Shown one piece after another: positions 23,264-38,578 of a stretch of DNA of 64,000 nt. The position numbers and the translations under genes were made by a program. The stretch spans positions 1-64,000 of IMG/VR virus record IMGVR_UViG_3300044638_006750; one strand, written 5' to 3'. The notes under the pieces were generated by a model that was given only the letters and a program-made list of their open reading frames with translations, was not told the DNA's origin and did no database searches. Numbering within the stretch: position 1 is the first letter of the stretch; every line of letters starts with the position of its first letter.

Positions 23264-23341
23264 TAAAGTGTTGCGAGATAAGCACTTATGACGAATCCGG
23301 CCGGCCGCCCTTGCCCTAAGTGCTTTAGGGTCAAGGACTTG
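23264..23341. repeat. 78-bp element, copy 3
   Basis: TAAAG-N15-ACTTA-N28-TAAGT-N15-ACTTG. Confidence 0.9.
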
Positions 23342-23343
23342 TG

Positions 23344-23508
23344 TCAAAGGTCTTGCTCAGTCCGTATGTATTCCATAATGTCATCGCAATCCGTACACAC
23401 TGGTTCTCCCATTTCAGAATAATACCAAGGTTCTACATACGCATGATTATCGCACGATGGACATTCCCACAAGTGTCTAATCTTTTTATCGTCAACTATA
23501 ACCCACAT
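23344..23508 (-). CDS. 54-aa zinc-ribbon protein (absent from ORF track)
   Basis: MWVIVDDKKIRHLWECPSCD...PVCTDCDDIMEY...; follows ORF 23511 directly; stop abuts the element. Confidence 0.7.
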   Translation of the reverse strand: MWVIVDDKKIRHLWECPSCDNHAYVEPWYYSEMGEPVCTDCDDIMEYIRTEQDL

Positions 23509-23743
23509 AGTTATTTCTCCATAGTCCAGCCAGCTTTTTGTATCACCTTCGTACTTTTATAGACTTTCGTATCGGGTAGCGCTGTAGCATAATCCTTGAA
23601 TCCTCTTTCATCTACATAGAAATATTCATCCAGTACATCGAACTGATTTGTTTCCCACAAAGCATCTACTGCCGCACCGAACGGCTTTTTACCTGTGGAA
23701 TAAATCAACTCTAAAGTGCCACACTTAATATAGTATTTAGCCA

Positions 23744-24298
23744 TTATATACTCTCATATCTGCAAGCGGTACAGTTACAACTATGTTCAGTCAAACAATC
23801 CCAATCAATTGCTCCCCATATTTCTTCATCAACAAAACCGAAACTTTCAACGCCAAAATCTATTGGAACAAGTATATTGCCGCTTTTGCGTTTGATCCAT
23901 CCAAAGTTAGCACGATGAGCATCTACATAAGATAATCCATGATACTTTTCTAGCGTCCATACAACAGATTGAATATTGATTGAGTTAGAACATTCACTAT
24001 CAAAACATTCTCCGTCACAATATTCTTCATCATAACATTCGGCCATAGGCTTCGCAACCTCAGTGAGATAACCCCACTCCGTCAACTCTCCCGCGTAACG
24101 TATACGTCCAACATCCCCATAAACTTTTGGAGCCATAGCCATATCGGCCAACCCACTCTGAATACGATGGGCAAAGTCAGCGTTGTCTTTATCCTGAAAA
24201 CATTTAAAACCAAGCCTCTTATTCCCAACAATCCTAAAGAAAGTATTCCTACTTCCTGCATCATCATACAATCCAACATAAGAACTAGGCATTATCAA
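23744..24298 (-). CDS. Protein-kinase-like fold protein
   Basis: GFKCF (beta3 Lys), APKVYG, catalytic-loop-like DAHRAN, IDFG. Confidence 0.65.
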   Translation of the reverse strand: MIMPSSYVGLYDDAGSRNTFFRIVGNKRLGFKCFQDKDNADFAHRIQSGLADMAMAPKVYGDVGRIRYAGELTEWGYLTEVAKPMAECYDEEYCDGECFDSECSNSINIQSVVWTLEKYHGLSYVDAHRANFGWIKRKSGNILVPIDFGVESFGFVDEEIWGAIDWDCLTEHSCNCTACRYESI

Positions 24299-24537
24299 CT
24301 CCCAAGGCTAATCACAACAGTATTATCGTACTTTCCAAACTCTACAATAATATCAAAATCATTATCGTCAAGTATAGACTGTAGCGTTTCCTGACTAATA
24401 AGAGTGTCTGTATTGGTACCAAAACTAATATCACTATTAGAAATGGCTTCCATCACACTACCATAGTCCAACTCGTTATAGTCACAAACTTCTCTAAGGT
24501 CGAGATATTCCCAAGCATAACTTTTCATATTTTATCC

Positions 24538-25242
24538 TTAGTGTGCAGGAAACAATACGTTAGCCAGACCCTTGACGCACATATCGCATGATATACTATC
24601 TTTAGTTCCGGTGCAAGTGATAACCGAGCGACCGCGACGGATTTCTGGACAAACCACAAACTTAGTCGCATTGAGAACAACCAGTTTCGGCAACGCTTTC
24701 CGCCATGCGTCGGCCTTTGCCTTGTTTTTCGGACGCTTAGGTGCAACCTTCATATCGCTATCACACCATGCGAACAGTTTGAAACCTTGGGCCAGTGCTT
24801 CGCCCATGTCGTTATCATCATGCACACTAGCGTATACATTCATATACTTTTGCAGACTCACAAGCCGGGAATCGTAGATATGAGTATAGAACCACATATC
24901 GGGCAGCGTATCGCCATCGGCCAGGATACTCTCACAAGCCCATGTCACGTTGGCAACATAGTCTAGGTCAAGTTCACCATTGAGAAACCAATCGCCACGC
25001 TCATGCCACCGAATAGACTTCTCACGACGCTTTGCGTCCAGAATCATAGCACGGATTTTATTCTTCTCGGTCACGACATTAGCAAAACCAGCAGTACGAG
25101 CGTTCTTATACTGCTTCTCAGTTTGCTCTGCATAGCAACCGTTGTCAAGATAATCACAATCAGGAGGACAAGTGTCCCCAACAGGACGAGAAACAACAAC
25201 ACAACCCTTGCCCAACTTATCGTTACCATCTGCCGTTTTCAT
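24538..25242 (-). CDS. Gp88-like Cys-rich protein
   Basis: TCPPDC...GCYA, IRWHERGD, WFYTH, VCPE...TC...CDMC. Confidence 0.6.
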   Translation of the reverse strand: MKTADGNDKLGKGCVVVSRPVGDTCPPDCDYLDNGCYAEQTEKQYKNARTAGFANVVTEKNKIRAMILDAKRREKSIRWHERGDWFLNGELDLDYVANVTWACESILADGDTLPDMWFYTHIYDSRLVSLQKYMNVYASVHDDNDMGEALAQGFKLFAWCDSDMKVAPKRPKNKAKADAWRKALPKLVVLNATKFVVCPEIRRGRSVITCTGTKDSISCDMCVKGLANVLFPAH

Positions 25243-25327
25243 GGTTTTCTCCTAGCGTGTCTCTCGATTCTACACTAGATTATCGGCACAGTCAAGAGGA
25301 AAACTTTAGAGAGAAAAAGATTTGTCG

Positions 25328-25405
25328 TAAAGTCTTATGGGGTCAGCACTTACGACGAACCCGGCCGCCCGAATTTGTTCTAAGTCTTTACCCTTAAAGA
25401 ACTTA
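25328..25405. repeat. 78-bp element, copy 4
   Basis: TAAAG-N15-ACTTA-N28-TAAGT-N15-ACTTA. Confidence 0.9.
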
Positions 25406-25462
25406 GGAGTACTTCACACAGTTTTAAAAACTGCTCAGTAGTTTCAGCATCGTTTTTCATAA

Positions 25463-25534
25463 TAGCCCCAAGAGGAATCGAACCTCTAATACAGGATTAG
25501 AAATCCCGTGTTATATCCGTTTAACTATGGGGCC
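25463..25534 (-). tRNA. tRNA-Arg(UCU)
   Basis: CGGGA-TT-TCT-AA-TCCTG; GGCCCCA/TGGGGCT acceptor. Confidence 0.85.
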
Positions 25535-25806
25535 GCATTGCTATTATAACATAACCCACTCAACGCCGCAAGCCCCCGTGGCGTCCCACGGAGGCATTTG
25601 CGGTTTTATGGTGTTATCGGCTACCATCTCCATAAGTAATATACTCTAGAAGCCCAATAACTTCAAGGTCACCATCCTATTATTGGCTGGTTAGGCTCTT
25701 CTAGGTTGCACCTTTAAGTCTTGCAACGGACTATCATTACGCGGGAGTTATCCCGCCGCACTATGCCTAAAATCTATTTATACTGGCATAGTCCAGTTTG
25801 TTGATG

Positions 25807-26094
25807 TTAGGCGATTGCCTCCTCCTTGGCAACCTTGCCATCGTGAGCGTCACCAGCCTGTTCGGCAGTTACGCCAGTGACGCGGGCACGCCACACCTTA
25901 TAACCTTGCTCGCTAAACGCCTTGACCTCACCAGCCTTGACATTAGCGTGAATGTCGCTGGACAGCGAACCACTCAGGCACTCACGAATCGAATCAACAA
26001 CACTGTCACGATCCAGTTCGTCCGCAACAATATCAACCGCAAAAGAAAACTTCTTCATAGTAATCAACCTTTCCAAAAGTGTTACAGTTACCAA
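25807..26094 (-). CDS. Hypothetical protein
   Basis: GAAAGG RBS before the internal MKKFSF; probable start near 26058. Confidence 0.65.
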   Translation of the reverse strand: MVTVTLLERLITMKKFSFAVDIVADELDRDSVVDSIRECLSGSLSSDIHANVKAGEVKAFSEQGYKVWRARVTGVTAEQAGDAHDGKVAKEEAIA

Positions 26095-26265
26095 TCACAT
26101 ACTACCAGTATACGCTACTGATAGCCACTTGTCAAGTCTGCCATGAAGGTTTCTTTCGTTGGCATCGTGGCAGCCACTTGCTTCGTGTTCCATCATTCTA
26201 CAGTATATTATCGGCATTGTCAAGGCCGAACTTGAGGAGTTACTCAAAAATTTTTTCTTTTGTCC

Positions 26266-26343
26266 TAAGTCGTTTAGCCGTAAGGACTTACGTCGAACCC
26301 GGCCCGCCTGCCTAGTCCTAAGTTCTTTAGGGACAAGGCTTTA
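26266..26343. repeat. 78-bp element, copy 5
   Basis: TAAGT-N15-ACTTA-N28-TAAGT-N15-CTTTA. Confidence 0.9.
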
Positions 26344-26345
26344 GG

Positions 26346-26720
26346 TCATGAAAGATAACCCTCACAACCCAAAGTGGTCAGATCACGCAGCAGTGCCTCT
26401 GCCGCTTCCGGCGTTTTCAGAGTCATCGTATTTCGATTGGTGCCACTATCACGCCACTTACCGAACTGGTCGTAGTGACCAACAATCACATCCGTCCAAT
26501 CCTTGGCTTCTTTCAGACCCCATCCGGTGTGCAGTCGGATAGCCTTGATACAGTGAATACGGTTGTTTGTACTCATACCTCCGGTGATTGTCACCATACG
26601 ACGCTGATTCACACCCAGCGCCATCTCCAAGGCACACACGATCTTCTCGTACATGTCCAGATTGCAGCCGTTGGATACAAGGTTCAGGGCCTCACGCACA
26701 CTCAAATCAATCTTGATCAT
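26346..26720 (-). CDS. Protein with a ribosomal protein bL12 (L7/L12) C-terminal-like domain
   Basis: NRIHCIKAIRLHTGWGLKEAKDW and EAAEALLRDLTTLG match the bL12-CTD pattern KIxxIKxxRxxTGxGLKEAK...EAE.L...L...G. Confidence 0.75.
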   Translation of the reverse strand: MIKIDLSVREALNLVSNGCNLDMYEKIVCALEMALGVNQRRMVTITGGMSTNNRIHCIKAIRLHTGWGLKEAKDWTDVIVGHYDQFGKWRDSGTNRNTMTLKTPEAAEALLRDLTTLGCEGYLS

Positions 26721-27199
26721 ATTCCAAAACTTTCTGTATACTTAGGGTCTATCTCGTAAATGCCGTCAAAATTTCCGTTGCGTTCTTCTAGAACATATAC
26801 CTGTTTGCCATGAGTAATCAAGGTATCATATTCACTATTGTCCCAAATAAACTCGTTGTTGTCACTTTCTCGTCGCCAGTGCGGATCACGAAGTGGATTA
26901 TAGAACAACTTTTCCAGATTGTCAATAGGCAAAATCGGGTAAAAGTCCTTACGCAACATCACCTCATCACACCTTACCCATCCACTCACATCATGCACAC
27001 CAGCCTCAAATACCTGTTTAGCCTTATTCGGCCTATTCCACAACTTACAACCCCTCATCTCCAACTGATATTCAGCAGGATCATAATAGCAAACCTCAAC
27101 AGTCTTTCCTCCCTGCTTAACTTTAATTTGCCAGTGCATATAGTGGGATCCACCACCCAAATGAAATCTCACTTCTCCATACAAAGGTTTCTGTTTCAT
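26717..27199 (-). CDS. Hypothetical protein (VRFHL...HWQIK family)
   Basis: Overlaps the start of 26720; own promoter at about 27208-27235. Confidence 0.7.
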   Translation of the reverse strand: MKQKPLYGEVRFHLGGGSHYMHWQIKVKQGGKTVEVCYYDPAEYQLEMRGCKLWNRPNKAKQVFEAGVHDVSGWVRCDEVMLRKDFYPILPIDNLEKLFYNPLRDPHWRRESDNNEFIWDNSEYDTLITHGKQVYVLEERNGNFDGIYEIDPKYTESFGI

Positions 27200-27436
27200 A
27201 CTTATACTATACTCTATCGTTCAGTTGTTGTCAATAGACCCTATACACTGGCTGACTACATCCACCCTATCCGAATCCGAAGGATTAGACAAGACAGATA
27301 GATTGGGTTATGCCATACTCGGCTTTGCATTTAACCGTGGCTTCTTTGATATCATTCTGCCAGCGGCCCTCATCTATCGTCTGCCTTAGTATACATCTAT
27401 TATCGGCAAGAGTCAAGAGAAGTCTTTAGAAAATCG

Positions 27437-27514
27437 CAAAGTGTTGAACTATAAGCACTTACGACGATTTCGGCCCGCCGAACTTGTCCTAAGTCTTTAT
27501 GTGATCACTAGTTA
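27437..27514. repeat. 78-bp element, copy 6
   Basis: CAAAG-N15-ACTTA-N28-TAAGT-N15-AGTTA. Confidence 0.88.
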
Positions 27515-27636
27515 GCAACATACCACCAATGGCAGTTTGCACAGAAGTGCCATATAATACCATAGTCATGGTCATATTTGTATACTAGAACATCACATTT
27601 GCCACACGGACAAATATCGCTAAGTGTTTTAAGCAT
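27508..27636 (-). CDS. 42-aa Cys-rich peptide (absent from ORF track)
   Basis: MLKTLSDICPCGKC...HFCANCHWWYVAN; overlaps the stop of 27629; its TAG lies inside the element. Confidence 0.55.
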   Translation of the reverse strand: MLKTLSDICPCGKCDVLVYKYDHDYGIIWHFCANCHWWYVAN

Positions 27637-28930
27637 TGTCTCGCACCAATTCTATATACTTGTTCACAAGTTCAGGAGCTGATATCTCATGCAGCCCAAT
27701 CAATTCTTTAACCTTGTTTCTCTGAGCATTACTCATTGCACTCATACGAGAGTTAAGAAAATTCAGAACATAGATAATGGCTTGCTCACGATTCATATCA
27801 CAAGCTTCCACAGTATTTAAGTCTCTAAAGTTTTTAGCCATTAGGATAATCCTCTGGGTAGTCTTTTGCAGGCTTAATCGGTCTGCTCATCACACCATCA
27901 TCTGGCATCCACCACGGAGCATCCATTCGGTCAACCAAGCCGGGAGATTCATGACAAAAAATCAGATGTGGACTGAACGGATCATTCTCAGAATAAGAAT
28001 ACTCTCCAGCCCACACGCCAATATGCTCACCATAGTACCAGATACCCTGCCCGTGCTCTGGTTGCTTCTCAAAGAAACTAATCCATTCCATCAGGAAGTC
28101 TCCTCAGTATTTCCATCCATCAGCTTATTAAATACATTCTCCTGCATCTTCATAAACTGTTTCTGATTGCCCCAATACTCTCCGCGTTCCATATTCTCAC
28201 ATACCAGATTATACAGATAGTTCAGTTCGGTTTTGGTCAGTTCAATCGTTGTAGTTTTCATTACCAATTCTCCGGCATAGGAATCTCACCAAAACTAGTA
28301 TAGCATACGACGCCATGACTGTCAATCTTCATGGTTCCCTCATTAACAAAGGGCGTCCATTCTGGCAAACCATCGTCAAATTCACCATGCGTCCACTGCC
28401 CCCATCCACCCCTATCCTTATCCCACATAAGAACCATAGGACAATCATATCCAGCAACGCAACACAGATACTCATCATCTATAATAGGATCGCCATAATG
28501 CCAATTCATTTTACTTTCTTCTTTTTCTTCTTCTTAGGCTTACTAGGCAACTTAGTCTCTATCTCAATCTCTTCTATTCTAACCGGTCTTAGCGTATTGT
28601 CCATAGCATCAAACCATGCTTCGGCAATCTTTCTGGTTTTACAGACCATCTGGGTTTCTTCATGGATACAACCAGCCCCATACTCACAGATAATAGCGTA
28701 ACCTTTCATTTTCCCCTCCCAATAATCAAGCACTTCTCACCCTTATCTCCATCCATATGGCTCACAGACTCATGAGGACCATAATACCACCTATCCTTAT
28801 CGTTCACATTGAAAACAATCTCGTCAGTCTTCAATCCGACATCATTATATCCACCCTCATATCCAAGCGTAAGAACCCGCATATCGGACGGATAGTTCTT
28901 CAACTGCTCAATAAACTCTGCAATGGTCAT
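27629..28930 (-). CDS. Operon of small hypothetical ORFs (28706-28930, 28506-28733, 28261-28509, 27834-28091, 27629-27841)
   Basis: Coupled ORFs behind a sigma70-like promoter at about 28948-28976. Confidence 0.7.
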
Positions 28931-29011
28931 GATCTCTCCTTTTCCAGCATTCTACCATCTATTTTCTATCTGTCAAGAGTATTAAAATACCGGCTGTTAA
29001 TGGATCGACTT

Positions 29012-29084
29012 ACCAGATAACAGGATTCGAACCTGTAACTCCTCTCATCTCTGAGTGGAACTCTGCCATTTGAGTTATATCCAG
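29012..29084 (-). ncRNA. tRNA-like RNA or pseudo-tRNA with a GAGA-tetraloop stem instead of an anticodon loop
   Basis: D arm ACTC-AAATGGCA-GAGT; T arm ACAGG-TTCGAAT-CCTGT; middle TCC-A-CTCA-GAGA-TGAG-A-GGA. Confidence 0.6.
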
Positions 29085-29456
29085 CGATAGTTTTACGATT
29101 AATGTCCGGTATCACGCATTAACCAACCACAGACCGTCATTTGGTGGTTTCTATCCGACCCCTGTTTGTAACCAGCGAATCTTTTACGCCCCGATTCTAT
29201 AACCCACCAATACTCCGATATTATGAACCCTTGGAGCAAGGTAAACACTGGTGGAAACCGTCCACGGAAATCCTCCCTGCAAATAAGGTGGTATTGCGCA
29301 TATAACCCTATTTGGTCTGGCTCTTGGAACGGTTACTGGTTGTTTGGTATCCGGCTGTTGTTTCAGTGATTCTACCCGATGAAAGATAAAATGCAAGCGC
29401 ATTGTTGCAGTGTTAATTCACTCTATTACCCGATGAAGGATAATACCGGATTGTAT

Positions 29457-29594
29457 TGGAGCGTGACCAAGGATTCGCACCTTAGTAGATTGGTATACTA
29501 TCCTAACGTATAACCCCGTTAGGCAACCCCACGCTGCATAACAGACCGTAGGTTTATCGTACAGGTTATCCCAATCTAGTCGCTAGACTCACGC
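29457..29594 (-). ncRNA. tRNA-like RNA with a pseudoknotted insert, copy A
   Basis: GCGTGA/TCACGC acceptor plus TCCA end; T-like arm TAAGG-TGCGAAT-CCTTG; insert closed by TAGATTGG/CCAATCTA. Confidence 0.72.
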
Positions 29595-29601
29595 ATTATA
29601 T

Positions 29602-29743
29602 TGGTCGTAATGAGGACGCCATCCCCCATAGATTAGCATTACTATACAACGTATAAGCCCGTTGTCAACCCCATCTCTGCCGAGACATGCGGGGTTTATC
29701 GTAATGGCTTATCCTAATCTAGTCCCGTCGCATGGACCTACGA
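29602..29743 (-). ncRNA. tRNA-like RNA with a pseudoknotted insert, copy B
   Basis: TCGTAG/TTACGA stem plus CCA; GTCC/GGAC arm; insert closed by TAGATTAG/CTAATCTA; covaries with copy A. Confidence 0.7.
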
Positions 29744-29836
29744 AAGTTTGTTTTGTCTTACTCAATCATTCTACATCTATTATCGTCACTTGTCAAGAGC
29801 CATCTGTAGGAATTCCAAAAATTTTTTGTATTGATG

Positions 29837-29914
29837 TAACCCTATGATACACAAGCACTTACGACAAACTCGGCGGGCCACCCTCGTCCTAAGTACCCTT
29901 GGGCAAAGCACTTA
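29837..29914. repeat. 78-bp element, copy 7
   Basis: TAACC-N15-ACTTA-N28-TAAGT-N15-ACTTA. Confidence 0.9.
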
Positions 29915-29929
29915 GGGCGAAGGGACGAT

Positions 29930-30409
29930 CTAGGCGTTTACTTCCTCATCGTCTTTGAAAAACTCCTGCATATCATACTCGTTCCACAATGCTACAGGAA
30001 TCATATCCTTACTATTGTAGTCGCAGTAGTTATCAGCACCATTATCCCATATACCACAGAAAGCCATCCCCGGTTCCCAATAGGTTGCTCGTACATTATA
30101 TCCTAATTCTACAAGTTTCTCATATAAACCGACAGGAGGACTCCAGGCACTATCAAAAGAGCAACAAACCTCGTTATCAACCCTAGTGGCTTTCAAACCA
30201 TATCGTTCCTCTTTTTCTGTGCCAACATCGGCCCCAATATCCCACTTGGTTCCCCAGTTGTTGATTTGCCAGTTATACCAATCTTCGCCCTCCGGCAACG
30301 GCAAAAACTCACTACAAGCCTTACCTAGATTGTAGGCTTTCTCAAACCTATCAACCATATCCTTATTAGGATGGGAAACCGTCAACTTGTTCATGCACCA
30401 GTTAGGCAT
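29930..30409 (-). CDS. DUF1281/Api92-like ferredoxin-fold protein
   Basis: MPNWCMN, WYNWQINNWGTKWD, FDSAWSPP, YWEPGMAFCG. Confidence 0.8.
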   Translation of the reverse strand: MPNWCMNKLTVSHPNKDMVDRFEKAYNLGKACSEFLPLPEGEDWYNWQINNWGTKWDIGADVGTEKEERYGLKATRVDNEVCCSFDSAWSPPVGLYEKLVELGYNVRATYWEPGMAFCGIWDNGADNYCDYNSKDMIPVALWNEYDMQEFFKDDEEVNA

Positions 30410-31199: not shown

Positions 31200-31221
31200 G
31201 GGCTTGGCTCGACATTTGATA

Positions 31222-31763: not shown

Positions 31764-32324
31764 TTATCGACCAACAGTACCTACCTTCTTTAGAGAATTT
31801 GGGTAGAACTTGAAAAAATCTCGAATGTCGTCGTTGTATGCCATATTGGCATTATCACAAGTCGCATCAAAATAGAGATAATACCCGCTATCTTGTCGAG
31901 TCAGATTTTGCGTATACTTCTTGACATGCTTTTGCTCACTCCATTTTGTCACTAGTCCATTAGGAGTAATAAAAATCATGAACAAAATATCGAAACATTC
32001 AGGCTTGACACCACTGAAAACGCAAATGCTCTTGGAGCCTTTCTTGGTGTGTTTGGGAAACATCTTAGCAGTCTTGACTTCGCAACGAATGTTGTCGTTC
32101 AAAAGAATGTCAAAAGATTTCGTACCACCATGCCTCTTGACATCATATCCGTTTTGACGCAGCCGACGAGCCATCAGTTTCTCGCCGCATTGACCAATAG
32201 CATACGGGTCAAGACGAGAAAGAGTATACGCTAACTTGTTCAGTTTGGGGCAAAAATAGGTTTCCGGCTCCAAACACTTGATTCCGTTCTTGATCTTATG
32301 AAAGTCACGCATCGTGAACATCAT
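31764..32324 (-). CDS. PD-(D/E)xK nuclease-like protein
   Basis: GEKLM...FDILL...CEVKTA. Confidence 0.65.
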   Translation of the reverse strand: MMFTMRDFHKIKNGIKCLEPETYFCPKLNKLAYTLSRLDPYAIGQCGEKLMARRLRQNGYDVKRHGGTKSFDILLNDNIRCEVKTAKMFPKHTKKGSKSICVFSGVKPECFDILFMIFITPNGLVTKWSEQKHVKKYTQNLTRQDSGYYLYFDATCDNANMAYNDDIRDFFKFYPNSLKKVGTVGR

Positions 32325-32403
32325 TATTCTCCTGTAGTTATGGCTATTCTACAAGAGTATCGGCTATTGTCAATAGATTTAGTGAAAAAATTATTTTTTG
32401 TTC

Positions 32404-32481
32404 TAAACCTATGGCAGATAAGAACTTACGACAAATCGGGCCGCTCCGCCTCACCCTAAGTGCTTTAGGGATAAGGCTTTG
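32404..32481. repeat. 78-bp element, copy 9
   Basis: TAAAC-N15-ACTTA-N28-TAAGT-N15-CTTTG. Confidence 0.9.
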
Positions 32482-32985
32482 CGTTCACTCAAAATCCACA
32501 AAAATAACCTGATTATATCCACGAGGCTTGATGGTTAGGCTCTCACCATAGTCATAGGTGTCAGCCTTTACGTTTGTCATACCAACAGCTTTCTTCGCGT
32601 AATATGTAATAGTACGCTGTGAGGCTTCATTGGGTAGATCAAATCCATATCGGTTAACCCAACCATAATTAGCTTCACCACCCAGCGTATCAGTAATTAT
32701 CACATTCACCTTCATCTCCAAACTCCTTATGTTCAAATACAAGATCGCTCATCAAATAGGATACCAGAATCCCAGCAGCCATACCCAAACCGAAAATCAC
32801 ATAACCATCCATGGCTCTTTTCCTTTTAGTTTATAAGATAGGTTGCCACACAACCGCCCAAAAAACTCGCCAGAAACAAGATTTTCTCACTGAAACTCAT
32901 GCTTGCACCATTCTACTTTAGAAAGATTATTCTGTCAAGTGCTGACTACAAGCCATTGTAGCCGAATCCGAAGGATTAGCAGAGA

Positions 32986-33156
32986 CTACCAGCCATCTCC
33001 TATTGCCTTTCGATTGTTCGCCCCGCGAGTCCGAAGACGCTTGGGACGGTTATCGTGCTTACCACTACCTCCAAGGTGGGGGTTGTGACCTTTGCCTATT
33101 TCCCATACTTGACGCACGTTCAATACCAACACCATGTTTTTCTTGCGTTTGCTCAT
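32986..33156 (-). CDS. 56-aa basic protein (absent from ORF track)
   Basis: MSKRKKNMVLVLNVRQVWEIGKGHNPHLGGSGKHDNRPKRLRTRGANNRKAIGDGW; directly behind a promoter. Confidence 0.65.
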   Translation of the reverse strand: MSKRKKNMVLVLNVRQVWEIGKGHNPHLGGSGKHDNRPKRLRTRGANNRKAIGDGW

Positions 33157-33218
33157 GTTCTTTACTCTACCATATTATCGACCAAAGTCAAGCACAACCT
33201 GTAAGAATTTTTTTGTCA

Positions 33219-33296
33219 TAAGTCATTGGCAGCAAAAGACTTAGAACTAATCCGAGCGGCCCCGCTTGCCACAAGTGCTGTAGCAGCAAGGGTTTA
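33219..33296. repeat. 78-bp element, copy 10
   Basis: TAAGT-N15-ACTTA-N28-CAAGT-N15-GTTTA. Confidence 0.88.
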
Positions 33297-33545
33297 CGAT
33301 CAGAAATCTCCAACAGTATTCAAGCGTACAGGCTCGCTCTTGAATGAACATACATTCAGTCCACTAGCAGCCACAACAGTATCGAACATGATACCGAGAA
33401 ACTCCTGCCTTTCAACTGCTGTACTCATATCATGTTCTGGCAACTCTAACAGAAACTCACGATCAACGGCAATCTCATCACCATTATCATTCTCTACGAG
33501 AATATCATAGAAGCGATGCGTGTTCATACTGTGCTCTCCTTGGGT

Positions 33546-33866
33546 TCAATCGTAGTAGGGGCCATCTTCGTTGTAATCAACATAACCGATTGCATCATCG
33601 GCATGGAAATCCTCTCGGTCATCTCCGTAGTAGCCGTAATCCTCATCTGTTCCCCAACCGCATGACGCAAGGCCGGACTCGTGATCTCCGTCCATATCAT
33701 CATTAATATCCTCATCAACCCAGTCCACCTCTCCACTATTATCATCCTCGTCGTAAAAGTCGTTGTAATCGTCATAGTTAGAATCTTCTTCGTCGCCAAC
33801 GTAGGCCATGTCATCGTCCTCATAAGCGTTATCGGGATCGAACAGGGGGTCAGGGTGACTCATCAT
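33546..33866 (-). CDS. Extremely acidic protein (DGDHESGLASCGWGTDEDYG)
   Basis: D/E-dominated; AG-rich RBS; own promoter. Confidence 0.75.
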   Translation of the reverse strand: MMSHPDPLFDPDNAYEDDDMAYVGDEEDSNYDDYNDFYDEDDNSGEVDWVDEDINDDMDGDHESGLASCGWGTDEDYGYYGDDREDFHADDAIGYVDYNEDGPYYD

Positions 33867-34170
33867 CTTCCTCTCTTTCTTGTATCGGCAGTCTACCAGA
33901 AAAACTTTAGGCTGTCAAGCCCTACCAGCCGTTTCGGCGATATTCTTCTCGGAGTTCCTCTTCTTCACGACGCTGACGATCATTCACAGGAGGGCCATAT
34001 CCCAGATCATATGCTTCTCGCGCAGCATCATATCCATCATCAGAATCTTCGTCATTCCATTGGTCGTATCGACTCATCTTTCACTCTCACTTTCTCTACT
34101 TCTTATATCGTCAAGTCTAGCATCTCAACTTTAGCCTGTCAAGAGAAAATCTAAAAATTTTTTGTTGACG

Positions 34171-34248
34171 TAAACTGTTGAGACATAAGGACTTACGTTT
34201 CGCGGGGCCGGCCGGCCTCACCGCAAGTGCTTATGCGGCAAGGCTTTG
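34171..34248. repeat. 78-bp element, copy 11
   Basis: TAAAC-N15-ACTTA-N28-CAAGT-N15-CTTTG. Confidence 0.88.
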
Positions 34249-34915
34249 CGTCAAACCGTAAACTCTACGTCCGGTTCGATCTGGTCACTAATCCCCACCA
34301 CCTCAGCCCAATCGTAAAAATCGACTTGGACACTAGGATCATCAATCGGCTCAACCATCGGCTCAAGAATACCCTGCTCTGCCATCTCGTCAAGGATCCG
34401 GTTTACTGCGTCGAAATCCAGCATACTGTTTTCCTTTGGGGTGGTGAGAACAAAAGCCATCATATGCGGAAAGTGTGTCATTGTCAAGCCCTTATTTCAT
34501 GAGTCTAAGAACAGCCTCCAACCTCGCAATTTCCAGCCTCAATTCAGCCACCTTGCCGAACATCCTAGCCTGTCGATAATTGTCGATATCGTATCGCAGG
34601 CTTATGATCTGATAGTTGATGGTTTCGCGTGTCATGGTCTTCCTTTCTCTAATCTAGTCTACACTCGGCCGTCCTACTTGTCAATACGCTTCTCAAAAAT
34701 TGTGTCCAAATAAATCTCTTTTTCACTGACCACCCATCCATACTCACAACGAGGGGTATACACACCAATATAGACTTTCCCTTTTTCGACTCCCTCAAAT
34801 CCCAGACCATAACCGAACAACCCAGCCAGAAATATCATAGAGAACATAAAAGGTTCCTTTCTATGTATATTATCGGCTAATTCCCGCTAACATCTTTAGC
34901 ACAAATAATTTCACC

Positions 34916-34993
34916 TAAATCCCTATCCTGCAACAACTTACGACCAGCCGGGGCGCGCCCCTGCATCGTAAGTCTTTACGTCGCAAGGGTTTG
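34916..34993. repeat. 78-bp element, copy 12
   Basis: TAAAT-N15-ACTTA-N28-TAAGT-N15-GTTTG. Confidence 0.88.
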
Positions 34994-35091
34994 CGTCAAT
35001 TTTTGTTATTGTAGAACGGACTGATTACACAATAGGCAAAACCGACATATCCGATGATGAACATTAAGGCACTGAACATTTTATAGTCTTT

Positions 35092-35928
35092 CTATTTACA
35101 GGGTTGCAGATCGTATAGGGAACAGTGGACAGTCCTACCGTCATCATACTGTACTGATGCCCAAGCATCTTTTGTACCATAAATCTCATCGGCCAAGACA
35201 CCCATGAAACATTTCACCACAACCTTTTGACCGTCCAGCATCACAGTATCCCCGTATCGAGGGGTGTGTTCAGCAGTAAACATTTTTAGTTTTCGTCCTT
35301 CCATGCAAATGGGCTGATTTCTTCGCCATATGCCGTAATGGCTTCGTACTGAGCCTTCAACGCTTCCACACGCTCTTTGCTGCCCGGCTTGCCAACCTTC
35401 ACGATCATGGTATCGTCTCCACCAATAAGCCGAGGATCGGCCTTCTCGACACGAATTTTGCCGAGCCGACGCAGTGCTTTCCGATTGAACTTCAAAACCT
35501 TTTCAGAAACCACATACCGCTTCTGGTCTGCAACTCCGTAAACGTAGTCGGTATCTTCGGTGATTCGATCATCGGGAATCTCTACCAGCATGGGAATCGC
35601 GATACCCTTGAAAACCATACGGGCCTGACGCTTGGCGTTCTCAATAATGGCAAACTTCGTTTTCATCTTTGTCTCTCTTTCTTGTGTGTGGATTCTAGCA
35701 ACCTGTCTACCGCTTGTCAAGCCCTCAAATCTTCCAGTGGGAGAACTTCAGGGTGAACACTTGTCCAGGGTACTTGCTTGCGATGTACGCTTCGGCGGTT
35801 TCCTTCCGATTGTCGGTAGCCGAAACACCCTGAACCACCTTACCGTCGATGATGACGCTCCAGATTCGACGCTTGCGAATCTTCGGCAGGGAAGCGATGA
35901 AACTGTTGACGCTAGTGACCTTTTCCAT
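35092..35928 (-). CDS. Hypothetical early ORFs (35725-35928, 35286 to about 35666, 35092 to about 35284)
   Basis: AG-rich leaders (AGAAAGAGAGA...ATG). Confidence 0.7.
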
Positions 35929-36052
35929 CTTTTCTCTCTCTTTCTTTCTCTTATATCGACATTATACCATGGATTCTTGAGGTTGCAAGAGAAATCTAGA
36001 AATTTTTGTGTCAAGATTTTTTGACAAAACTTTTGCCTGCTTTTTGAGCATT

Positions 36053-36068
36053 TGGCATACTATTTGCT
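36053..36068 (+). promoter_or_regulatory. sigma54-type -24/-12 motif
   Basis: TGGCATACTATTTGCT (GG-N10-GC). Confidence 0.55.
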
Positions 36069-36077
36069 AGTGCGTCA

Positions 36078-36155
36078 TAAGTTCTTGTGGCTTAAGCACT
36101 TACGTCAAAATTTGCCCGCCCTCCTCGTTGTAAGTCTATATGCGGCAAGCAGTTA
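36078..36155. repeat. 78-bp element, copy 13
   Basis: TAAGT-N15-ACTTA-N28-TAAGT-N15-AGTTA. Confidence 0.9.
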
Positions 36156-36912
36156 CGATTAGTTTTCGCGTCCTACATACCAAGTTTTCCCACTATCGTC
36201 TTTCATTTTTTTCCACCCCATTTTCGCAAAATACCTATCTTGAAGATAGTTGTCAACAAGCCTAAATGTTTGCAAGAAAATCCACCAACCAACCGTAGAG
36301 CCAACAAACCAAGCCCCAATAAACCATATTGCCAAGGTTGCCCACATCTCCACCTCTGCTTCACTCATGTTTCCCCTTTCGGTTTAGGATACGCCCATCC
36401 AAGAAGCGTTTTCACAACAATAATCGTAGAACATATCGTTCAGAACTTCTTCATAGTTCTTATCTTTCAAGAGCCTACGGTCAAGGGTTGAGTCACACTC
36501 AGCATAAAACTTACCCTTTCCTACTTCAAACACAATCGTACAGGCATGAGCCTCACTACCCCAAATCCTAGCCTTAGCATCCACAAACTTCTTCAACATC
36601 TTTTTCTCTCTTTCTTAGTACGATTCTAGTAGATGGTTTCAATGTTGTCAAGCCCCACAAGCCACTTCCCACTCATGGGGCATATAGCCTTTTTGCAGTT
36701 CGGTTGTGCTGCACTCGCATTGCACACCGGCCAGATCGACCACCCATACATCACCCTCGTCGAAGTACCAATCAACAATCTTTCCAGTGATTCCACCAAG
36801 CCGAACCTTGTCACCAATCTCGTACATTCTAGCCTTTCTTTCTTGTTGCCTGTATTCTATACATCTATTATCGACTTGTCAACAGTGAAAACTGAAGAAA
36901 TTTTTTTAGACT

Positions 36913-36990
36913 TAAAGTGTTGGTGTGTAAGTAGTTACGTCAAATCGGAGCGGCCGGCCTCGCCGTAAGTTCTTTACGGACAAGGCTTTA
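36913..36990. repeat. 78-bp element, copy 14
   Basis: TAAAG-N15-AGTTA-N28-TAAGT-N15-CTTTA. Confidence 0.88.
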
Positions 36991-36992
36991 TG

Positions 36993-37292
36993 TCAACCCA
37001 CAACCATACGGTCTTCAAACGGTGTACCATCGTTCAGGTACCACTCATAGTTCTTCTGGTATACCTGTACGGGTGAATACTGGTTGATACGCTTCTTCGT
37101 GGTGTGTGTACGCCATCCACCACTATTCAGCATCACAGTATCATCGGGATAGATTACTACAACATTCGTACCGTGCAACTCGATTGCAACGCTACCATCT
37201 GCTTGAATGTAGGCATAGGTGTTGTTGCCAACCTTTCGTTGTCCACGATTACGCTTACCCAAAACCATCTTCGTTGCTTCTGCGTGTGTCAT
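36993..37292 (-). CDS. Phage hypothetical protein (LHG...LNSGGWRT.TTK.RIN family)
   Basis: Motif recalled from phage early proteins (unverified); stop abuts the element. Confidence 0.7.
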   Translation of the reverse strand: MTHAEATKMVLGKRNRGQRKVGNNTYAYIQADGSVAIELHGTNVVVIYPDDTVMLNSGGWRTHTTKKRINQYSPVQVYQKNYEWYLNDGTPFEDRMVVG

Positions 37293-37703
37293 TTTTTCTT
37301 TCAGTTAAAAAGGTTTTCCAGCCATTCACGATACATCTCGCCCATCGCACAAAAAACTTCATGCAGAATATAGGTGAGTCCTGCACATGCACACAGTAGA
37401 GCCAAATCCACAAAAGTCATTTCTTTTTCCTCTTTGGAGAGTCTAGTATATCGTCTCTCGCTGGTCCTGTCAATACTCTCCACAATCTTCGACAACTTCT
37501 TCTCCAATCACTTCGCAGTGTTCGCAGCACTTCGGGCAAATACCATAATCCACTTGGGCGAAGGTCATCTCACAGCCGCAGCAATCCGAAGTGAAGTAGA
37601 CCCGAATGACGTTTTCCATGGTTTTCCTTTCCTCTTGTGTTGTGTCTATTATACTTATCGGCATATTCCTGTCAATACCTTAAAAAGATTTTTATACAAG
37701 CCA

Positions 37704-37781
37704 TAAGTGGTTGTCAGATAAGCACTTACGTCAAACGCGGCGCGCCCCGCTTTTCGTAAGTCTTTATGGGCTAAGGTTTTA
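37704..37781. repeat. 78-bp element, copy 15
   Basis: TAAGT-N15-ACTTA-N28-TAAGT-N15-TTTTA. Confidence 0.9.
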
Positions 37782-38371
37782 CGTTATAGAGCGGATGCTC
37801 TCCCGATACCTGAACCGCAGTTCAGTAGCAGCAGCCCGAATCACCTCGCATAGCACCTCTTTTAGAGCACCCTTCGCATGGGGGAGTTGAAGCTGTGCCT
37901 CACGCAGAGTCAACTGAATCGTGCTGGTTTGCATAGTGTCGAATGATGGCTGAAAATAGCTGGTATTCATCTGTTCTCTCTTTCTGTGGTTGTATCCTAC
38001 CGTATCCACGCTTGGCTGTCAAGTCGTGTAGGCATTGGTAAGCCGATGATACTTAGCCCACAACTCATCTACCACGAACTGCACAACCCGATCATGAGAA
38101 CCACGGCAAACGTAGTATCCCATGTGAATGTCGAACAGGGCATACGTCCCATCCGTTTGGGGGTGGAACGTGAAGCCACACTTGTAGGCGTAGGCGTTGA
38201 TCTTACCCTTGATCGTCGAAGTCTTAGGAGGCTTTCTCATTTTCTTCTCTCTCTTTCTCTCTTACTTCTTATATCGACATTATACCAGCCCCTACTTGAG
38301 TTTGCAAGAGAAAAATCTAGATTTTTATGTCAAGAAATTTTGACAAAATTTTTCTGTATTTTGAGTATGTT

Positions 38372-38387
38372 TGGCACACCAATTGCT
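38372..38387 (+). promoter_or_regulatory. sigma54-type -24/-12 motif
   Basis: TGGCACACCAATTGCT (GG-N10-GC), near consensus. Confidence 0.6.
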
Positions 38388-38396
38388 ATATCGTCA

Positions 38397-38474
38397 TAAC
38401 CCTATATCTCATAAGTACTTACGTCGAATCCGAGCCGCCCCGCTAGTCGTAAGTCTTTATCAGATCACCACTTA
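38397..38474. repeat. 78-bp element, copy 16
   Basis: TAACC-N15-ACTTA-N28-TAAGT-N15-ACTTA. Confidence 0.9.
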
Positions 38475-38476
38475 GG

Positions 38477-38578
38477 TCACATGTGGTCATTATAGATTAT
38501 TTCGATCTGCCTAAACACATAGAACAACAGCATAGTGATGGTGGAAGCAAAACACAGGTCGATAATCAGCCTAATCAT
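38477..38578 (-). CDS. 33-aa membrane peptide (absent from ORF track)
   Basis: AAGGAG RBS; MIRLIIDLCFASTITMLLFYVFRQIEIIYNDHM; stop abuts the element. Confidence 0.6.
   Translation of the reverse strand: MIRLIIDLCFASTITMLLFYVFRQIEIIYNDHM

What the first reader, a model, noticed from the sequence alone, without database searches (positions are those of the whole stretch)
23264..38578. Cassette-like architecture: upstream genes stop at the element edge
Seen: the minus-strand stop codon of the preceding gene lies 2-3 bp beyond the right box (23344, 26346, 32485, 33300, 34251, 34996, 36159, 36993, 38477) or inside it (21275, 27508, 37779). On the other side come an AT tract and a promoter. Units therefore read element-promoter-gene(s)-element. 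In several copies the inner ACTTACG...CGTAAGT plus spacer folds into a long hairpin (21243-21280, 34936-34973, 37724-37761). Known: integron cassettes end at attC hairpins, and promoter/stem-loop cassettes (PeSL) shuffle early modules in T4-type phages. Inference: a modular gene-shuffling array. No recombinase is visible in this window, so it would have to be encoded elsewhere, be host-supplied, or work by homologous recombination.
Basis: partly seen in the sequence, partly recalled or inferred. Interest (0 to 1): 0.78.

Follow-up and report, generated by a model that had tools for sequence, protein, structure and literature searches.

The report
Four-box repeat upstream of early promoters
The early-gene region of an uncultured freshwater jumbo phage carries 17 copies of a rigid ~82-bp four-box repeat, each sitting between one gene's stop codon and the next strong promoter; it looks like a protein-binding promoter/boundary module that also gives recombination a patch of homology, not like an integron-type cassette site.

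Summary
The repeats are real. There are 17 co-oriented copies, confined to window 19,994-39,511. The same element occurs about 720 times in roughly 100 related IMG/VR loci. Each copy holds two 29-bp palindromic "H boxes" 53 bp apart, separated by a GC-rich spacer. An A/T (UP-like) tract and a near-consensus sigma-70 promoter follow. Upstream genes usually stop at or inside the first box.

The integron-like reading fails on four counts:
- Base pairing is no better than in column shuffles, so there is no covariation.
- There is no fixed crossover point.
- No recombinase is visible in the window.
- Units carry their own promoters and hold 1-10 genes.

The terminator reading is also weak. The element has no U-tract, fold z-scores are only -1.5 to -2.5, and a canonical terminator sits beside one copy.

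The strongest evidence points to the DNA level. Box spacing is invariant at 22/31/22 bp. The distance from the element to the -35 hexamer is quantised in helical turns (22, 32-33 or 43 bp). This pattern suggests a protein bound on one face of the helix acting on the promoter.

The region is strongly mosaic. Some breakpoints fall inside the element, with H1 travelling with the upstream gene and H2 plus promoter with the downstream gene. Element junctions are broken no more often than promoter-only junctions. The closest known analogue is the PeSL of T4-type phages, and I file this as a new variant of that kind.

The parts
19740..39515 (-). Element-bearing early region: all genes on the minus strand, 33 strong sigma-70 promoters, 9 tRNA genes, GC 43-49% against 30-37% in the flanks
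19994..20089 (-). Element copy e20089 (boxes 20001-20082)
   Evidence: It follows a canonical terminator. The DUF932 stop lies 92 nt upstream. A weak promoter TAGACA-18-TACAAT has its -35 at 19967, an off-phase distance of 37.
20105..20142 (-). Canonical intrinsic terminator (17-bp GC stem followed by TTTTTT) between the DUF932 gene and e20089; the only convincing terminator in the region
19748..19779 (-). Isolated single H box downstream of the array end
21203..21306 (-). Element copy e21306 (boxes 21221-21302)
   Evidence: The stop TAG at 21275-21277 lies inside box B. Promoter TTGACA-17-TAGAAT has its -35 at 21190, distance 34.
23244..23352 (-). Element copy e23352 (boxes 23262-23343)
   Evidence: The stop TGA at 23344-23346 abuts box A. 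The next promoter scoring at least 10/12 is 114 nt away.
25310..25416 (-). Element copy e25416 (boxes 25326-25407); follows tRNA-Arg rather than an ORF
   Evidence: Promoter TTGACT-17-TAGAAT has its -35 at 25295, distance 34.
26246..26351 (-). Element copy e26351 (boxes 26264-26345)
   Evidence: Stop TGA at 26346-26348. Promoter -35 at 26223, distance 44.
27420..27517 (-). Element copy e27517 (boxes 27435-27516)
   Evidence: The 42-aa family-53 ORF stops at 27508, inside box A. Promoter -35 at 27416, distance 22.
29817..29925 (-). Element copy e29925 (boxes 29835-29916)
   Evidence: Stop TAG at 29930-29932. Promoter -35 at 29796, distance 42.
31103..31213 (-). Element copy e31213 (boxes 31120-31201)
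   Evidence: Stop TAG at 31222-31224. Promoter -35 at 31090, distance 33.
32385..32490 (-). Element copy e32490 (boxes 32402-32483)
   Evidence: Stop TGA at 32485-32487. Promoter -35 at 32373, distance 32.
33206..33303 (-). Element copy e33303 (boxes 33217-33298)
   Evidence: Stop TGA at 33300-33302. Promoter TTGACT-16-TAGAGT has its -35 at 33191, distance 29.
34152..34260 (-). Element copy e34260 (boxes 34169-34250)
   Evidence: Stop TGA at 34251-34253. Promoter -35 at 34142, distance 30.
34901..35005 (-). Element copy e35005 (boxes 34914-34995)
   Evidence: Only a 27-aa ORF abuts it; the 70-aa ORF stops at 35092. A weak promoter has its -35 at 34863.
36060..36166 (-). Element copy e36166 (boxes 36076-36157); part of a 166-nt repeat shared with e38487
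   Evidence: Stop TAA at 36159-36161. Promoter TTGCAA-16-TATAAT has its -35 at 35988, distance 91.
36894..37001 (-). Element copy e37001 (boxes 36911-36992)
   Evidence: Stop TGA at 36993-36995. Promoter -35 at 36882, distance 32.
37684..37789 (-). Element copy e37789 (boxes 37702-37783)
   Evidence: The stop TAA at 37779-37781 is the TAA of box A. Promoter TTGACA-16-TATAAT has its -35 at 37675, distance 30.
38381..38487 (-). Element copy e38487 (boxes 38395-38476)
   Evidence: Only a 35-aa ORF abuts it. Promoter -35 at 38307, distance 91.
39408..39511 (-). Element copy e39511 (boxes 39422-39503); first of the array, downstream of the subtilase gene
   Evidence: The subtilase stop lies 122 nt upstream. 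Promoter TTGACA-17-TATAAT has its -35 at 39391, distance 34.

Best explanation
The element is a cis-acting DNA site that forms the upstream part of a composite early-promoter and unit-boundary module. In the direction of transcription the module reads:
- the stop codon of the previous gene, often the TGA of a conserved TTGAC;
- H1, a 29-bp palindrome of consensus CGTAAGTnCTTg-N5-tAAGgACTTACG;
- a GC-rich spacer of about 24 bp;
- H2, a direct repeat of H1 placed 53 bp downstream of it;
- an A/T-rich UP-like tract;
- a promoter of consensus TTGACA-N17-TAGAAT.

Inferred mechanism. A sequence-specific protein, either phage-encoded or a host factor and probably oligomeric, occupies the four half-palindromes on one face of the helix. 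From there it acts on the adjacent host-RNA-polymerase promoter, by activation, timed shut-off or insulation. Bound right after a stop codon, it may also block read-through from the upstream unit.

Shown consequence. Seventeen similar copies in one orientation, like the many similar promoters, give homologous recombination patches of identity. Transcription units have been exchanged, inserted and deleted at these patches during the evolution of this phage family. This matches the proposal for PeSLs of T4-type phages. It needs no dedicated recombinase and no single-strand hairpin.
For: Sequence is conserved, not structure.
- In 455 unique copies, TAA/TTA/TAA/TTA are invariant and the flanking box letters are strongly conserved, while the loops and the GC spacer vary.
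- Watson-Crick counts equal the expectation under independence for every candidate pair. A.C mismatches are at least as common as G.U.
- On the 17 window copies, paired cells are 69.1% and 64.1% for the two candidate structures. Column shuffles give 69.5% and 65.7%, and the covariation score is at or below the shuffle mean.

Geometry is rigid.
- A23 to T45 is 22 bp in 437 of 437 copies.
- T45 to A76 is 31 bp in 414 of 437 copies.
- A76 to T98 is 22 bp in 436 of 437 copies.
- These spacings are about 2, 3 and 2 helical turns.

The element is coupled to the promoter.
- 368 of 460 unique copies have a promoter scoring at least 10/12 within 150 nt.
- The distance from T98 to the -35 hexamer peaks at 22, 32-33 and 43, with almost nothing at 24-28, 35-36 or 38-40.
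- Counting once per downstream gene family gives 94 points, vector strength 0.42 at 10.5-11.5 bp, Rayleigh p about 1e-7.
- The linker is an UP-like A/T tract that grows or shrinks in steps of about 10.5 bp.

The element is not a terminator.
- Terminator-like sites number 15 against 14.8 expected, and none is the element itself.
- A canonical terminator sits directly before e20089.
- Stops fall inside H1 in many copies, so ribosomes would cover it.
- Fold z-scores are modest.

Distribution. H boxes occur only in the 20-kb promoter-dense early region. They are kept at orthologous junctions across the family, for example after family 2 in 58 of 58 arrays and before family 4 in 55 of 56.

Recombination. 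H1 co-segregates with the upstream gene and H2 plus promoter with the downstream gene. Change points are spread mainly over the centre of the element.
Against: - No binding protein has been identified. About 30 early-region ORFs scanned show no recognisable DNA-binding domain.
- The host is unknown, so a host factor cannot be checked.
- There are no RNA data. No RNA run holding the stretch was listed.
- Roughly half of the strong promoters in the region work without an element, so it is not required for promoter function.
- The quantised linker could partly reflect duplication or loss of 10-11-bp A-tract modules rather than selection on phase.
- One orthologous group sits off-phase at 37 bp.
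- Copies at orthologous sites are not independent, so the statistics are approximate.
- A rigid palindromic motif could also be read on RNA by a sequence-specific RNA-binding protein or nuclease.
Confidence: 0.5

Rival explanations
1. An RNA-level 3'-end element. The transcribed element folds, or is bound as RNA, and then terminates transcription, attenuates it, is processed (for example by RNase III, as at the T7 early R sites), or stabilises the upstream mRNA. This is the role assigned to the stem-loop of PeSLs.
For: - The element starts at or within a few bases of the stop codon in most copies.
- It is transcribed in one orientation.
- The sense strand folds slightly better than shuffles (z -1.5 to -2.5), while the antisense strand does not.
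- Several copies can form an imperfect hairpin of about 35 bp.
- A distant lineage (L286) carries a C4-loop-G4 hairpin next to one H box, like the GGGG...CCCC stem-loop of PeSLs (PMC2839356).
Against: - There is no U-tract, and terminator-like sites are not enriched.
- A canonical terminator is present in addition at e20089.
- There is no compensatory covariation, and pairing is no better than column shuffles.
- A.C mismatches outnumber G.U mismatches in H1.
- Loop and spacer lengths are invariant, which is unusual for hairpins.
- Helical-turn phasing to the -35 hexamer has no meaning for an RNA.
- In about a tenth of copies H1 is partly coding.
Confidence: 0.2
2. A dedicated site-specific cassette system that is integron-like or otherwise recombinase-driven. 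A recombinase encoded elsewhere in the 233-kb genome, or by the host, would recognise the H boxes and excise or insert promoter-gene units.
For: - The architecture is superficially attC-like: an imperfect palindrome at the 3' ends of genes, all in one orientation, with stops inside it.
- Some genes always keep an element at their junction although their partners differ. Family 44 is followed by an element in 18 of 19 arrays with 11 different partners, and family 39 is preceded by one with 10 partners.
- 11 of 99 indel events have both ends in elements.
Against: - Change points are spread from column 8 to column 127 rather than at one position.
- 55% of recent breakpoints lie at neither an element nor a promoter.
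- Element junctions are not broken more often than promoter-only junctions.
- There is no folded-strand signature.
- No recombinase was found in the window or next to the array.
- Units hold 1-10 genes with internal promoters.
- Near-identical genomes from several lakes are colinear.
Confidence: 0.04
3. A selfish miniature mobile element (MITE, REP/BIME or Correia-like) that has colonised the intergenic spaces of the early region and brings promoter-compatible sequence with it.
For: - It is a short palindromic extragenic repeat with many copies at gene ends.
- A variant form (H box + GC block + hairpin) occurs in both orientations in a distant lineage.
Against: - Copies within one genome are only 60-70% identical outside the boxes, so there has been no recent burst.
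- Copies occupy the same orthologous junctions across phages whose proteins are about 80% identical.
- They are confined to one 20-kb region and one orientation.
- Internal spacing and promoter phasing are conserved.
- No RAYT or transposase was seen in the window.
Confidence: 0.06

Closest known systems
PeSL (promoter-early stem-loop) regulatory cassettes of T4-type phages (Arbiol et al. 2010, PMC2839356; Comeau et al. 2014, PMC4122927)
   Same: [quoted passage not shown]
- A structured GC-containing motif is followed by an AT-rich tract and a near-consensus sigma-70 early promoter.
- It is repeated many times in one orientation in a hyperplastic region of small ORFans.
- Indels and replacements between relatives have ends inside the modules.
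- Homologous recombination is a sufficient mechanism.
   Different: - The phage is not a recognisable T4 relative. Its portal has no tblastn match in 50,697 phage records.
- The upstream part is not a simple G-run/C-run stem-loop terminator. It is an 82-bp array of two 29-bp palindromes with invariant 22/31/22 spacing.
- It shows no covariation and no terminator features.
- It is phased in helical turns with the promoter.
- Only about half of the promoters carry it.
- Mini-circles were not and could not be tested.
Integron attC sites and gene-cassette arrays
   Same: - It is an imperfect palindrome at the 3' end of ORFs, with all copies co-oriented.
- Stop codons often lie inside it.
- Neighbouring gene content is variable.
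   Different: - There is no IntI or attI.
- The boxes are unrelated to the RYYYAAC/GTTRRRY core sites.
- Sequence is conserved rather than fold.
- There is no fixed crossover point.
- Units have their own promoters and often several genes.
Upstream activating regions of strong bacterial promoters, such as rrnB P1 with its UP element plus helically phased Fis sites, and class I CRP sites (own knowledge of the E. coli literature)
   Same: - Palindromic protein sites lie upstream of an UP element and a consensus promoter.
- All sites sit on one helical face.
- The allowed positions differ by whole helical turns.
   Different: - The box sequence matches no factor I can name.
- The cognate protein and the sign of the effect are unknown.
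- The sites lie directly against the preceding coding sequence.
Phage phi29 p4/p6 nucleoprotein switch (PMC3100819 appeared in a search; not read in detail)
   Same: Several inverted-repeat sites for a phage protein lie upstream of early promoters and control the early-to-late switch through a multimeric DNA-protein complex.
   Different: That system is a single regulatory region, not 17 dispersed copies. The sequences are unrelated.
REP/BIME extragenic palindromes of enterobacteria
   Same: Pairs of imperfect palindromes of about 30 nt with a spacer lie at the 3' ends of genes. They bind proteins and can stabilise mRNA.
   Different: REPs are genome-wide and mobilised by RAYT transposases. 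This element is confined to one 20-kb early region, is phased with promoters, and has no RAYT in view.

Membership tests
Integron attC / cassette array | IntI tyrosine recombinase and attI next to the array | tested here: not met
   The flanks of the array encode a DUF932 protein plus a terminator on one side and subtilase, GNAT and GlmS on the other. About 50 window ORFs were scanned against Pfam and none has a recombinase domain.
Integron attC / cassette array | Site defined by a folded single strand, with conserved structure, variable sequence and R/L core sites GTTRRRY | tested here: not met
   The boxes are CGTAAGT/ACTTACG. Pairing equals column shuffles and there is no covariation. Fold z-scores are -1.5 to -2.5.
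Integron attC / cassette array | One fixed crossover point, so that nearly the whole site travels with one cassette | tested here: not met
   Change points are spread over columns 8-127 of the module. Identity decays gradually across the centre of the element.
Integron attC / cassette array | Mostly promoterless single-ORF cassettes | tested here: not met
   Units hold 1-10 genes and carry 33 strong promoters in 20 kb.
PeSL (T4-type promoter-early stem-loop) | Near-consensus sigma-70 early promoter with an AT-rich tract upstream of the -35 hexamer | tested here: met
   13 of 17 window copies have such a promoter, and 368 of 460 family copies have a promoter scoring at least 10/12. The linker is A/T-rich and UP-like.
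PeSL (T4-type promoter-early stem-loop) | Stable stem-loop just upstream that acts as a terminator | tested here: not met
   No conserved hairpin exists beyond the palindromic consensus, and there is no U-tract. A C4-loop-G4 hairpin is present only in the variant of a distant lineage. Terminator activity itself cannot be tested here.
PeSL (T4-type promoter-early stem-loop) | Clustered in a hyperplastic region of small variable ORFs | tested here: met
   The 20-kb array holds mostly ORFan genes of 40-230 aa, and adjacency is poorly conserved among 100 related arrays.
PeSL (T4-type promoter-early stem-loop) | Indel and replacement ends between close relatives fall in the modules | tested here: inconclusive
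   90 of 198 ends lie within 25 bp of an element (53) or a promoter (37), against 21% of bases. This is no more than their share of gene junctions, and 34 of 99 events have neither end there. Element and promoter junctions are disrupted more often than plain junctions.
PeSL (T4-type promoter-early stem-loop) | Excised mini-circles formed by recombination between flanking modules | not testable with these tools
   Only assembled contigs of DNA runs were available. No joint attributable to this genome was seen.
Intrinsic (Rho-independent) terminator | GC-rich hairpin directly followed by a U-tract | tested here: not met
   The scan found 15 sites against 14.8 expected. The only convincing site is 20105-20142, which lies outside the element.
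REP/BIME or MITE | Dispersed genome-wide or recently amplified copies with a cognate transposase, and presence/absence at orthologous sites | tested here: not met
   Copies are confined to 18.7-39.5 kb of the 64-kb window. They are 60-70% identical to each other and are kept at orthologous junctions, for example 58 of 58 and 52 of 52 arrays. No transposase was seen in the window.
Protein-binding upstream promoter region (UAS / operator array) | Conserved palindromic boxes with fixed spacing on one helical face | tested here: met
   Spacing of 22/31/22 bp is invariant in 95-100% of 437 copies, and the box letters are invariant.
Protein-binding upstream promoter region (UAS / operator array) | Stereospecific (helical-turn) placement relative to the core promoter | tested here: met
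   Distances of 22, 32-33 and 43 bp with empty gaps between them; Rayleigh p about 1e-7 after collapsing by downstream family. One group sits off-phase at 37 bp.
Protein-binding upstream promoter region (UAS / operator array) | An identified cognate DNA-binding protein | not testable with these tools
   No DNA-binding domain was recognised among the early ORFs scanned. The host is unknown.

The most novel reading that the evidence does not exclude
The four-box element is the docking array of a dedicated phage protein, still unidentified. This protein would both insulate or switch each early transcription unit and actively pair elements to promote unit exchange. That would make it a double-strand-DNA, promoter-carrying 'cassette system' of an uncultured jumbo-phage family, functionally parallel to integrons but mechanistically unrelated to them.
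Probability: 0.08. Interest if true: 0.85.

Novelty: new variant of a known kind. Interest (0 to 1): 0.55.

Why it matters
If the DNA-level reading is right, an abundant freshwater jumbo-phage lineage with no cultured relative controls its host-polymerase-driven early genes through a repeated, geometrically rigid nucleoprotein module. That would give three things:
- a defined motif for fishing out the regulator;
- a way to delimit early transcription units in metagenomic phage genomes;
- a second, independent example, outside T4-type phages, of regulatory modules doubling as linkers for modular gene shuffling.

The result also warns against reading any palindromic 3'-end repeat as an attC-like hairpin. 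Here the pairing potential is entirely a by-product of the palindromic box sequence.

Tried and rejected
Searches that found nothing useful:
- Megablast of 16 kb of the array, blastn of 3.1 kb, and tblastn of the portal against 50,697 phage records gave no relative. TerL matched Bacillus phages at only about 24% identity.
- The Rfam E-value search found only tRNAs and a Pistol ribozyme. No family matched the element.
- No RNA run holding the stretch was listed. DNA contigs from four lake samples were colinear. The listed joints had short sides and higher depth, and they look like related phages sharing conserved pieces rather than rearrangements of this genome.
- The twin contig L200 is 99.85% identical and colinear, so it carries no information on breakpoints.
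- Pfam, PHROGs and ESM Atlas scans of about 30 early proteins found no DNA-binding candidate.

Structure tests:
- RNAalifold on the 17 copies gave only a 6-pair stem at -0.5 kcal/mol.
- Mutual information between columns showed only neighbour effects.
- I tested the local H1 and H2 hairpins, the B-C hairpin, the A-D long hairpin and an alternative H1-extension hairpin. None shows covariation.

Scans considered but not run:
- I dropped a scan of bacterial genomes for H boxes. The strict 20-base pattern matches only 7 of about 1,400 boxes even in the phages, and by my estimate the 14-base pattern would give about 2,000 chance hits.
- I did not walk the remaining 169 kb of the contig to look for recombinases.

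Full report
**Source and context.** The window is the first 64 kb of IMG/VR contig IMGVR_UViG_3300044638_006750 (232,683 bp), and window coordinates equal contig coordinates. It is a jumbo phage. It encodes a large terminase, portal, cement protein, RtcB, an RNA ligase, GlmS, a subtilase and a sigma-70-family factor. It has no cultured relative. There are hundreds of metagenomic relatives from lake water, with TerL 78-91% identical. Genes from about 44 kb down to position 1 lie on the minus strand. The structural genes start at about 44.4 kb on the plus strand.

**Checking the observation.**
- A profile built from the copies finds 17 full elements. All score higher on the minus strand and all lie between 19,994 and 39,511.
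- A profile of the 29-bp box alone finds nothing outside 18.7-39.5 kb.
- The exact inner inverted repeat occurs 4 times against 0.00 expected.
The stops at 34996 and 38477 belong to ORFs of 27 and 35 aa.
- In 11 of 17 copies the stop lies within 7 nt of box A or inside the element. In two copies it is 19-26 nt away and in three it is 92-122 nt away. One copy follows tRNA-Arg.
- Across 351 family copies with an upstream ORF stop nearby, stops peak at three in-element positions, one per reading frame. These are the TGA of a conserved TTGAC (71, plus 30 one base off), the TAA of box A (18) and the TAG of box B (37). An ORF running into the element in any frame therefore usually meets a stop (the box B TAG exists only in copies with G at that position).
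- Downstream, 13 of 17 copies have a promoter matching at least 10 of 12 consensus positions that starts 22-44 nt after the last box.
- The 20-kb region holds 33 strong minus-strand sigma-70 promoters, against about 8 in the preceding 20 kb and almost none elsewhere. Promoters therefore outnumber elements about two to one, and units between elements hold 1-10 genes.

**Anatomy.** The family consensus comes from 147 and later 455 unique copies. Read in the direction of transcription it is:
- ttgaC;
- H1 = CgTAAanCCTTg-N5-tAAGgACTTAcG;
- gCnAg, a GC-rich block (GgccggCC), then gaatTtGa;
- H2 = CGTAAGTnCTTat-N4/5-cAAnGacTTAcG;
- aCaA, an A/T tract, then the TTGACA -35 hexamer.

H1 and H2 are direct repeats 53 bp apart, and each is a 12-5-12 inverted repeat. 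The trinucleotides TAA, TTA, TAA and TTA are invariant. The spacing between them is 22 bp in 437 of 437 copies, 31 bp in 414 of 437, and 22 bp in 436 of 437. These are about 2, 3 and 2 helical turns.

**Structure or sequence?**
- Individual copies fold in different ways. Some form local hairpins and others form one long hairpin.
- RNAalifold finds essentially nothing.
- Mutual information shows only neighbour effects.
- For every candidate helix, Watson-Crick counts equal those expected from column composition. A.C mismatches are at least as frequent as G.U.
- On the window's own 17 copies, paired cells are 69.1% for the two local hairpins and 64.1% for the long hairpin. Column shuffles give 69.5% and 65.7%. 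Covariation scores are at or below the shuffle mean.
- Fold z-scores are -1.5 to -2.5 on the sense strand and -0.8 to +0.4 on the antisense strand.

The pairing potential is therefore a by-product of a palindromic consensus. What is conserved is sequence and geometry, which is the signature of recognition by a protein.

**Coupling to the promoter.**
- The distance from the invariant T of box D to the -35 hexamer is quantised. Among 368 copies with a promoter, it peaks at 22 (48 copies at 21-23), at 32-33 (137 at 31-34) and at 43 (50 at 42-45). Almost nothing falls at 24-28, 35-36 or 38-40.
- Counting each distance once per downstream gene family gives 94 points and the same peaks, with vector strength 0.42 at 10.5-11.5 bp and Rayleigh p about 1e-7. 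One orthologous group, the copy after the DUF932 gene, sits off-phase at 37 bp.
- The linker looks like an UP element, with A/T tracts plus a (T/C)CAAG or TAAAG motif about 13 nt before the -35 hexamer. It is lengthened or shortened in steps of about one helical turn.
- From standard promoter geometry (my inference), the centre of H2 sits near -68, -78 or -89. H1 lies five turns further upstream.
- This kind of face-of-helix dependence is known for Fis sites plus the UP element at rrn P1, and for class I CRP sites (own knowledge). It has no meaning for an RNA element.

**Terminator reading.**
- Terminator-like sites are not enriched (15 against 14.8 expected), and none is the element itself.
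- The one convincing terminator, at 20105-20142, lies directly upstream of e20089. At that junction a terminator and an element coexist.
- Stops inside H1 mean that terminating ribosomes would cover part of the element.

**Family-wide distribution.**
- About 720 copies occur in about 100 related loci. Nearly all are co-oriented with the genes and occupy the same genomic compartment between the DUF932 gene and the subtilase/GlmS side.
- More distant relatives have degenerate copies (L265).
- L286 has a variant made of one H box, the GGCCGGCC block and a C4-loop-G4 hairpin, used in both orientations upstream of promoters.
- The compartment is compositionally distinct in all relatives checked: 41-45% GC against 32-35%, with the elements themselves excluded.

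**Testing the shuffling hypothesis.** ORFs of 101 arrays were clustered into families.
- Adjacency is poorly conserved everywhere: at element junctions, at promoter-only junctions and at plain junctions.
- The diversity of the downstream neighbour does not correlate significantly with how often a family is followed by an element (Spearman 0.23, p = 0.13).
- Element presence is bimodal and tied to gene identity. Some families are always followed by an element and others always preceded by one, whatever the partner.
- Consider pairs whose upstream flanks are at least 85% identical but whose downstream regions are unrelated. Identity stays near 0.9 through H1, falls across the GC centre, and reaches background in H2. 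Converse pairs keep the A/T tract and promoter.
- Change points are spread out, mostly over columns 48-79 for upstream-related pairs and over columns 8-127 for downstream-related pairs. This fits homologous exchange and not a fixed crossover.
- Between array pairs at least 88% identical, 99 deduplicated indel or replacement events give 198 ends. Of these, 53 lie at an element, 37 at a promoter only and 108 at neither. Both ends lie in elements in 11 events and in promoters in 7.
- Many events are clean single-gene indels at plain gene boundaries.
- When both genes of a junction are present in another non-redundant array, the junction is 'always adjacent' for 21 of 135 element junctions, 25 of 100 promoter-only junctions and 60 of 148 plain junctions. 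Element versus plain gives p = 3e-6, and element versus promoter gives p = 0.10.
- Unit boundaries are therefore preferred places for change, but the element adds little beyond what a promoter junction already shows.
- A 99.85%-identical twin contig and contigs from four lake samples are colinear.

**Comparison with known systems.** PeSLs of T4-type phages are defined as a strong sigma-70-like promoter with an AT-rich tract and an upstream stem-loop that terminates transcription. They are clustered in hyperplastic regions and mediate indels by recombination, with mini-circles shown by inverse PCR (PMC2839356, PMC4122927). The present module shares the composite layout, the genomic setting and the evolutionary behaviour. 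It replaces the simple stem-loop with a rigid four-box array, shows no terminator features, and is phased with the promoter. It fails all four tested integron/attC criteria, namely recombinase, folded site, fixed crossover and promoterless cassettes. It also fails the REP/MITE criteria.

**Verdict.** The integron-type interpretation is not supported. The PeSL-type interpretation is partly supported, as an evolutionary side effect. The most likely primary role is a DNA-level, protein-bound upstream and boundary module of early promoters (confidence about 0.5). An RNA 3'-end role is the main rival (about 0.2). I rate it as a new variant of a known kind and of moderate interest.

Noticed in passing
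window 25735-25797 (-): A Pistol self-cleaving ribozyme match (Rfam RF02679, 53.7 bits against a gathering score of 34.5, E 1.9e-7). It lies between a small early gene (25807-26058) and tRNA-Arg (25463-25534).
   Followed up: no
window 29011-29085 (-): ARAGORN calls a tRNA of unknown identity with a four-base anticodon (gaga) in an enlarged loop. Rfam tRNA scores it at only 37.8 bits. It could be a frameshift-suppressor-like or degenerate tRNA.
   Followed up: no
window 20000-40000 versus flanks; also L214, L216, L222 and 11 other loci: The element-bearing early region is a sharp compositional island of 41-49% GC against 30-37% on both sides. The island remains with the elements masked. It was seen in all 14 relatives checked, and the boundary lies at the last element.
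   Followed up: partly
window 19700-39700 (-), e.g. 21162-21190, 29768-29796, 31672-31700: The early promoters share more than the sigma-70 hexamers. The spacer carries a conserved (C/A)CGATAA, and the -10 hexamer is usually TAGAAT. The consensus is TTGACA-nnn-(C/A)CGATAA-n6-TAGAAT, and it is also found in related phages.
   Followed up: partly
window 44381-45013 (+): A sigma-70-family factor gene (Pfam Sigma70_r2) sits exactly at the strand switch in front of the structural genes. This suggests that late transcription uses host core polymerase with a phage sigma factor.
   Followed up: no
window 23744-24292 (-): A conserved early protein of 182 aa has look-alikes with a small protein-kinase-like fold (APH, Kdo, YrbL or T7-kinase type; Atlas feature scores 0.93-0.98, TM 0.54-0.73).
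   Followed up: partly
L286:337-414, 2279-2356, 3223-3300, 4967-5044, 9830-9905: A distant lineage (DUF932 protein 77% identical) carries a variant element: one 29-bp H box, the GGCCGGCC block and a C4-loop-G4 hairpin. It is used in both orientations upstream of promoters.
   Followed up: partly
window 35976-36141 and 38295-38460: A 166-nt repeat (about 70% identical by the repeat finder; 83% mean column identity when aligned over about 236 nt) covers most of the element, a 70-nt conserved linker with an extra TTGACA, and a TTGCAA-N16/17-TATAAT promoter. Many relatives carry this longer form.
   Followed up: partly
window 44-1084, 2446-3813 (-) and tRNA cluster 22115-22771 (-): An RNA ligase (PHA02142 OB fold plus RNA_ligase domain) and RtcB are encoded together with a cluster of seven tRNA genes. 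This points to a tRNA-repair capacity.
   Followed up: no
window 47080-47559 (+): An ERCC4/XPF-type nuclease gene lies immediately upstream of, and overlaps, the large terminase gene.
   Followed up: no
L200 (IMGVR_UViG_3300046777_001915) and runs X1-X7: Essentially the same phage (99.85% identical over 21.7 kb) was assembled from another sample. At least seven lake or freshwater metagenome runs hold 89% or more of the sampled words of a 6-kb stretch of the array.
   Followed up: partly
window 36993-37292 (-): One early ORF matches Pfam Kyano_Gp96 (E 8e-11), a family from T4-like cyanophages. This hints at gene exchange with T4-type hyperplastic regions.
   Followed up: no
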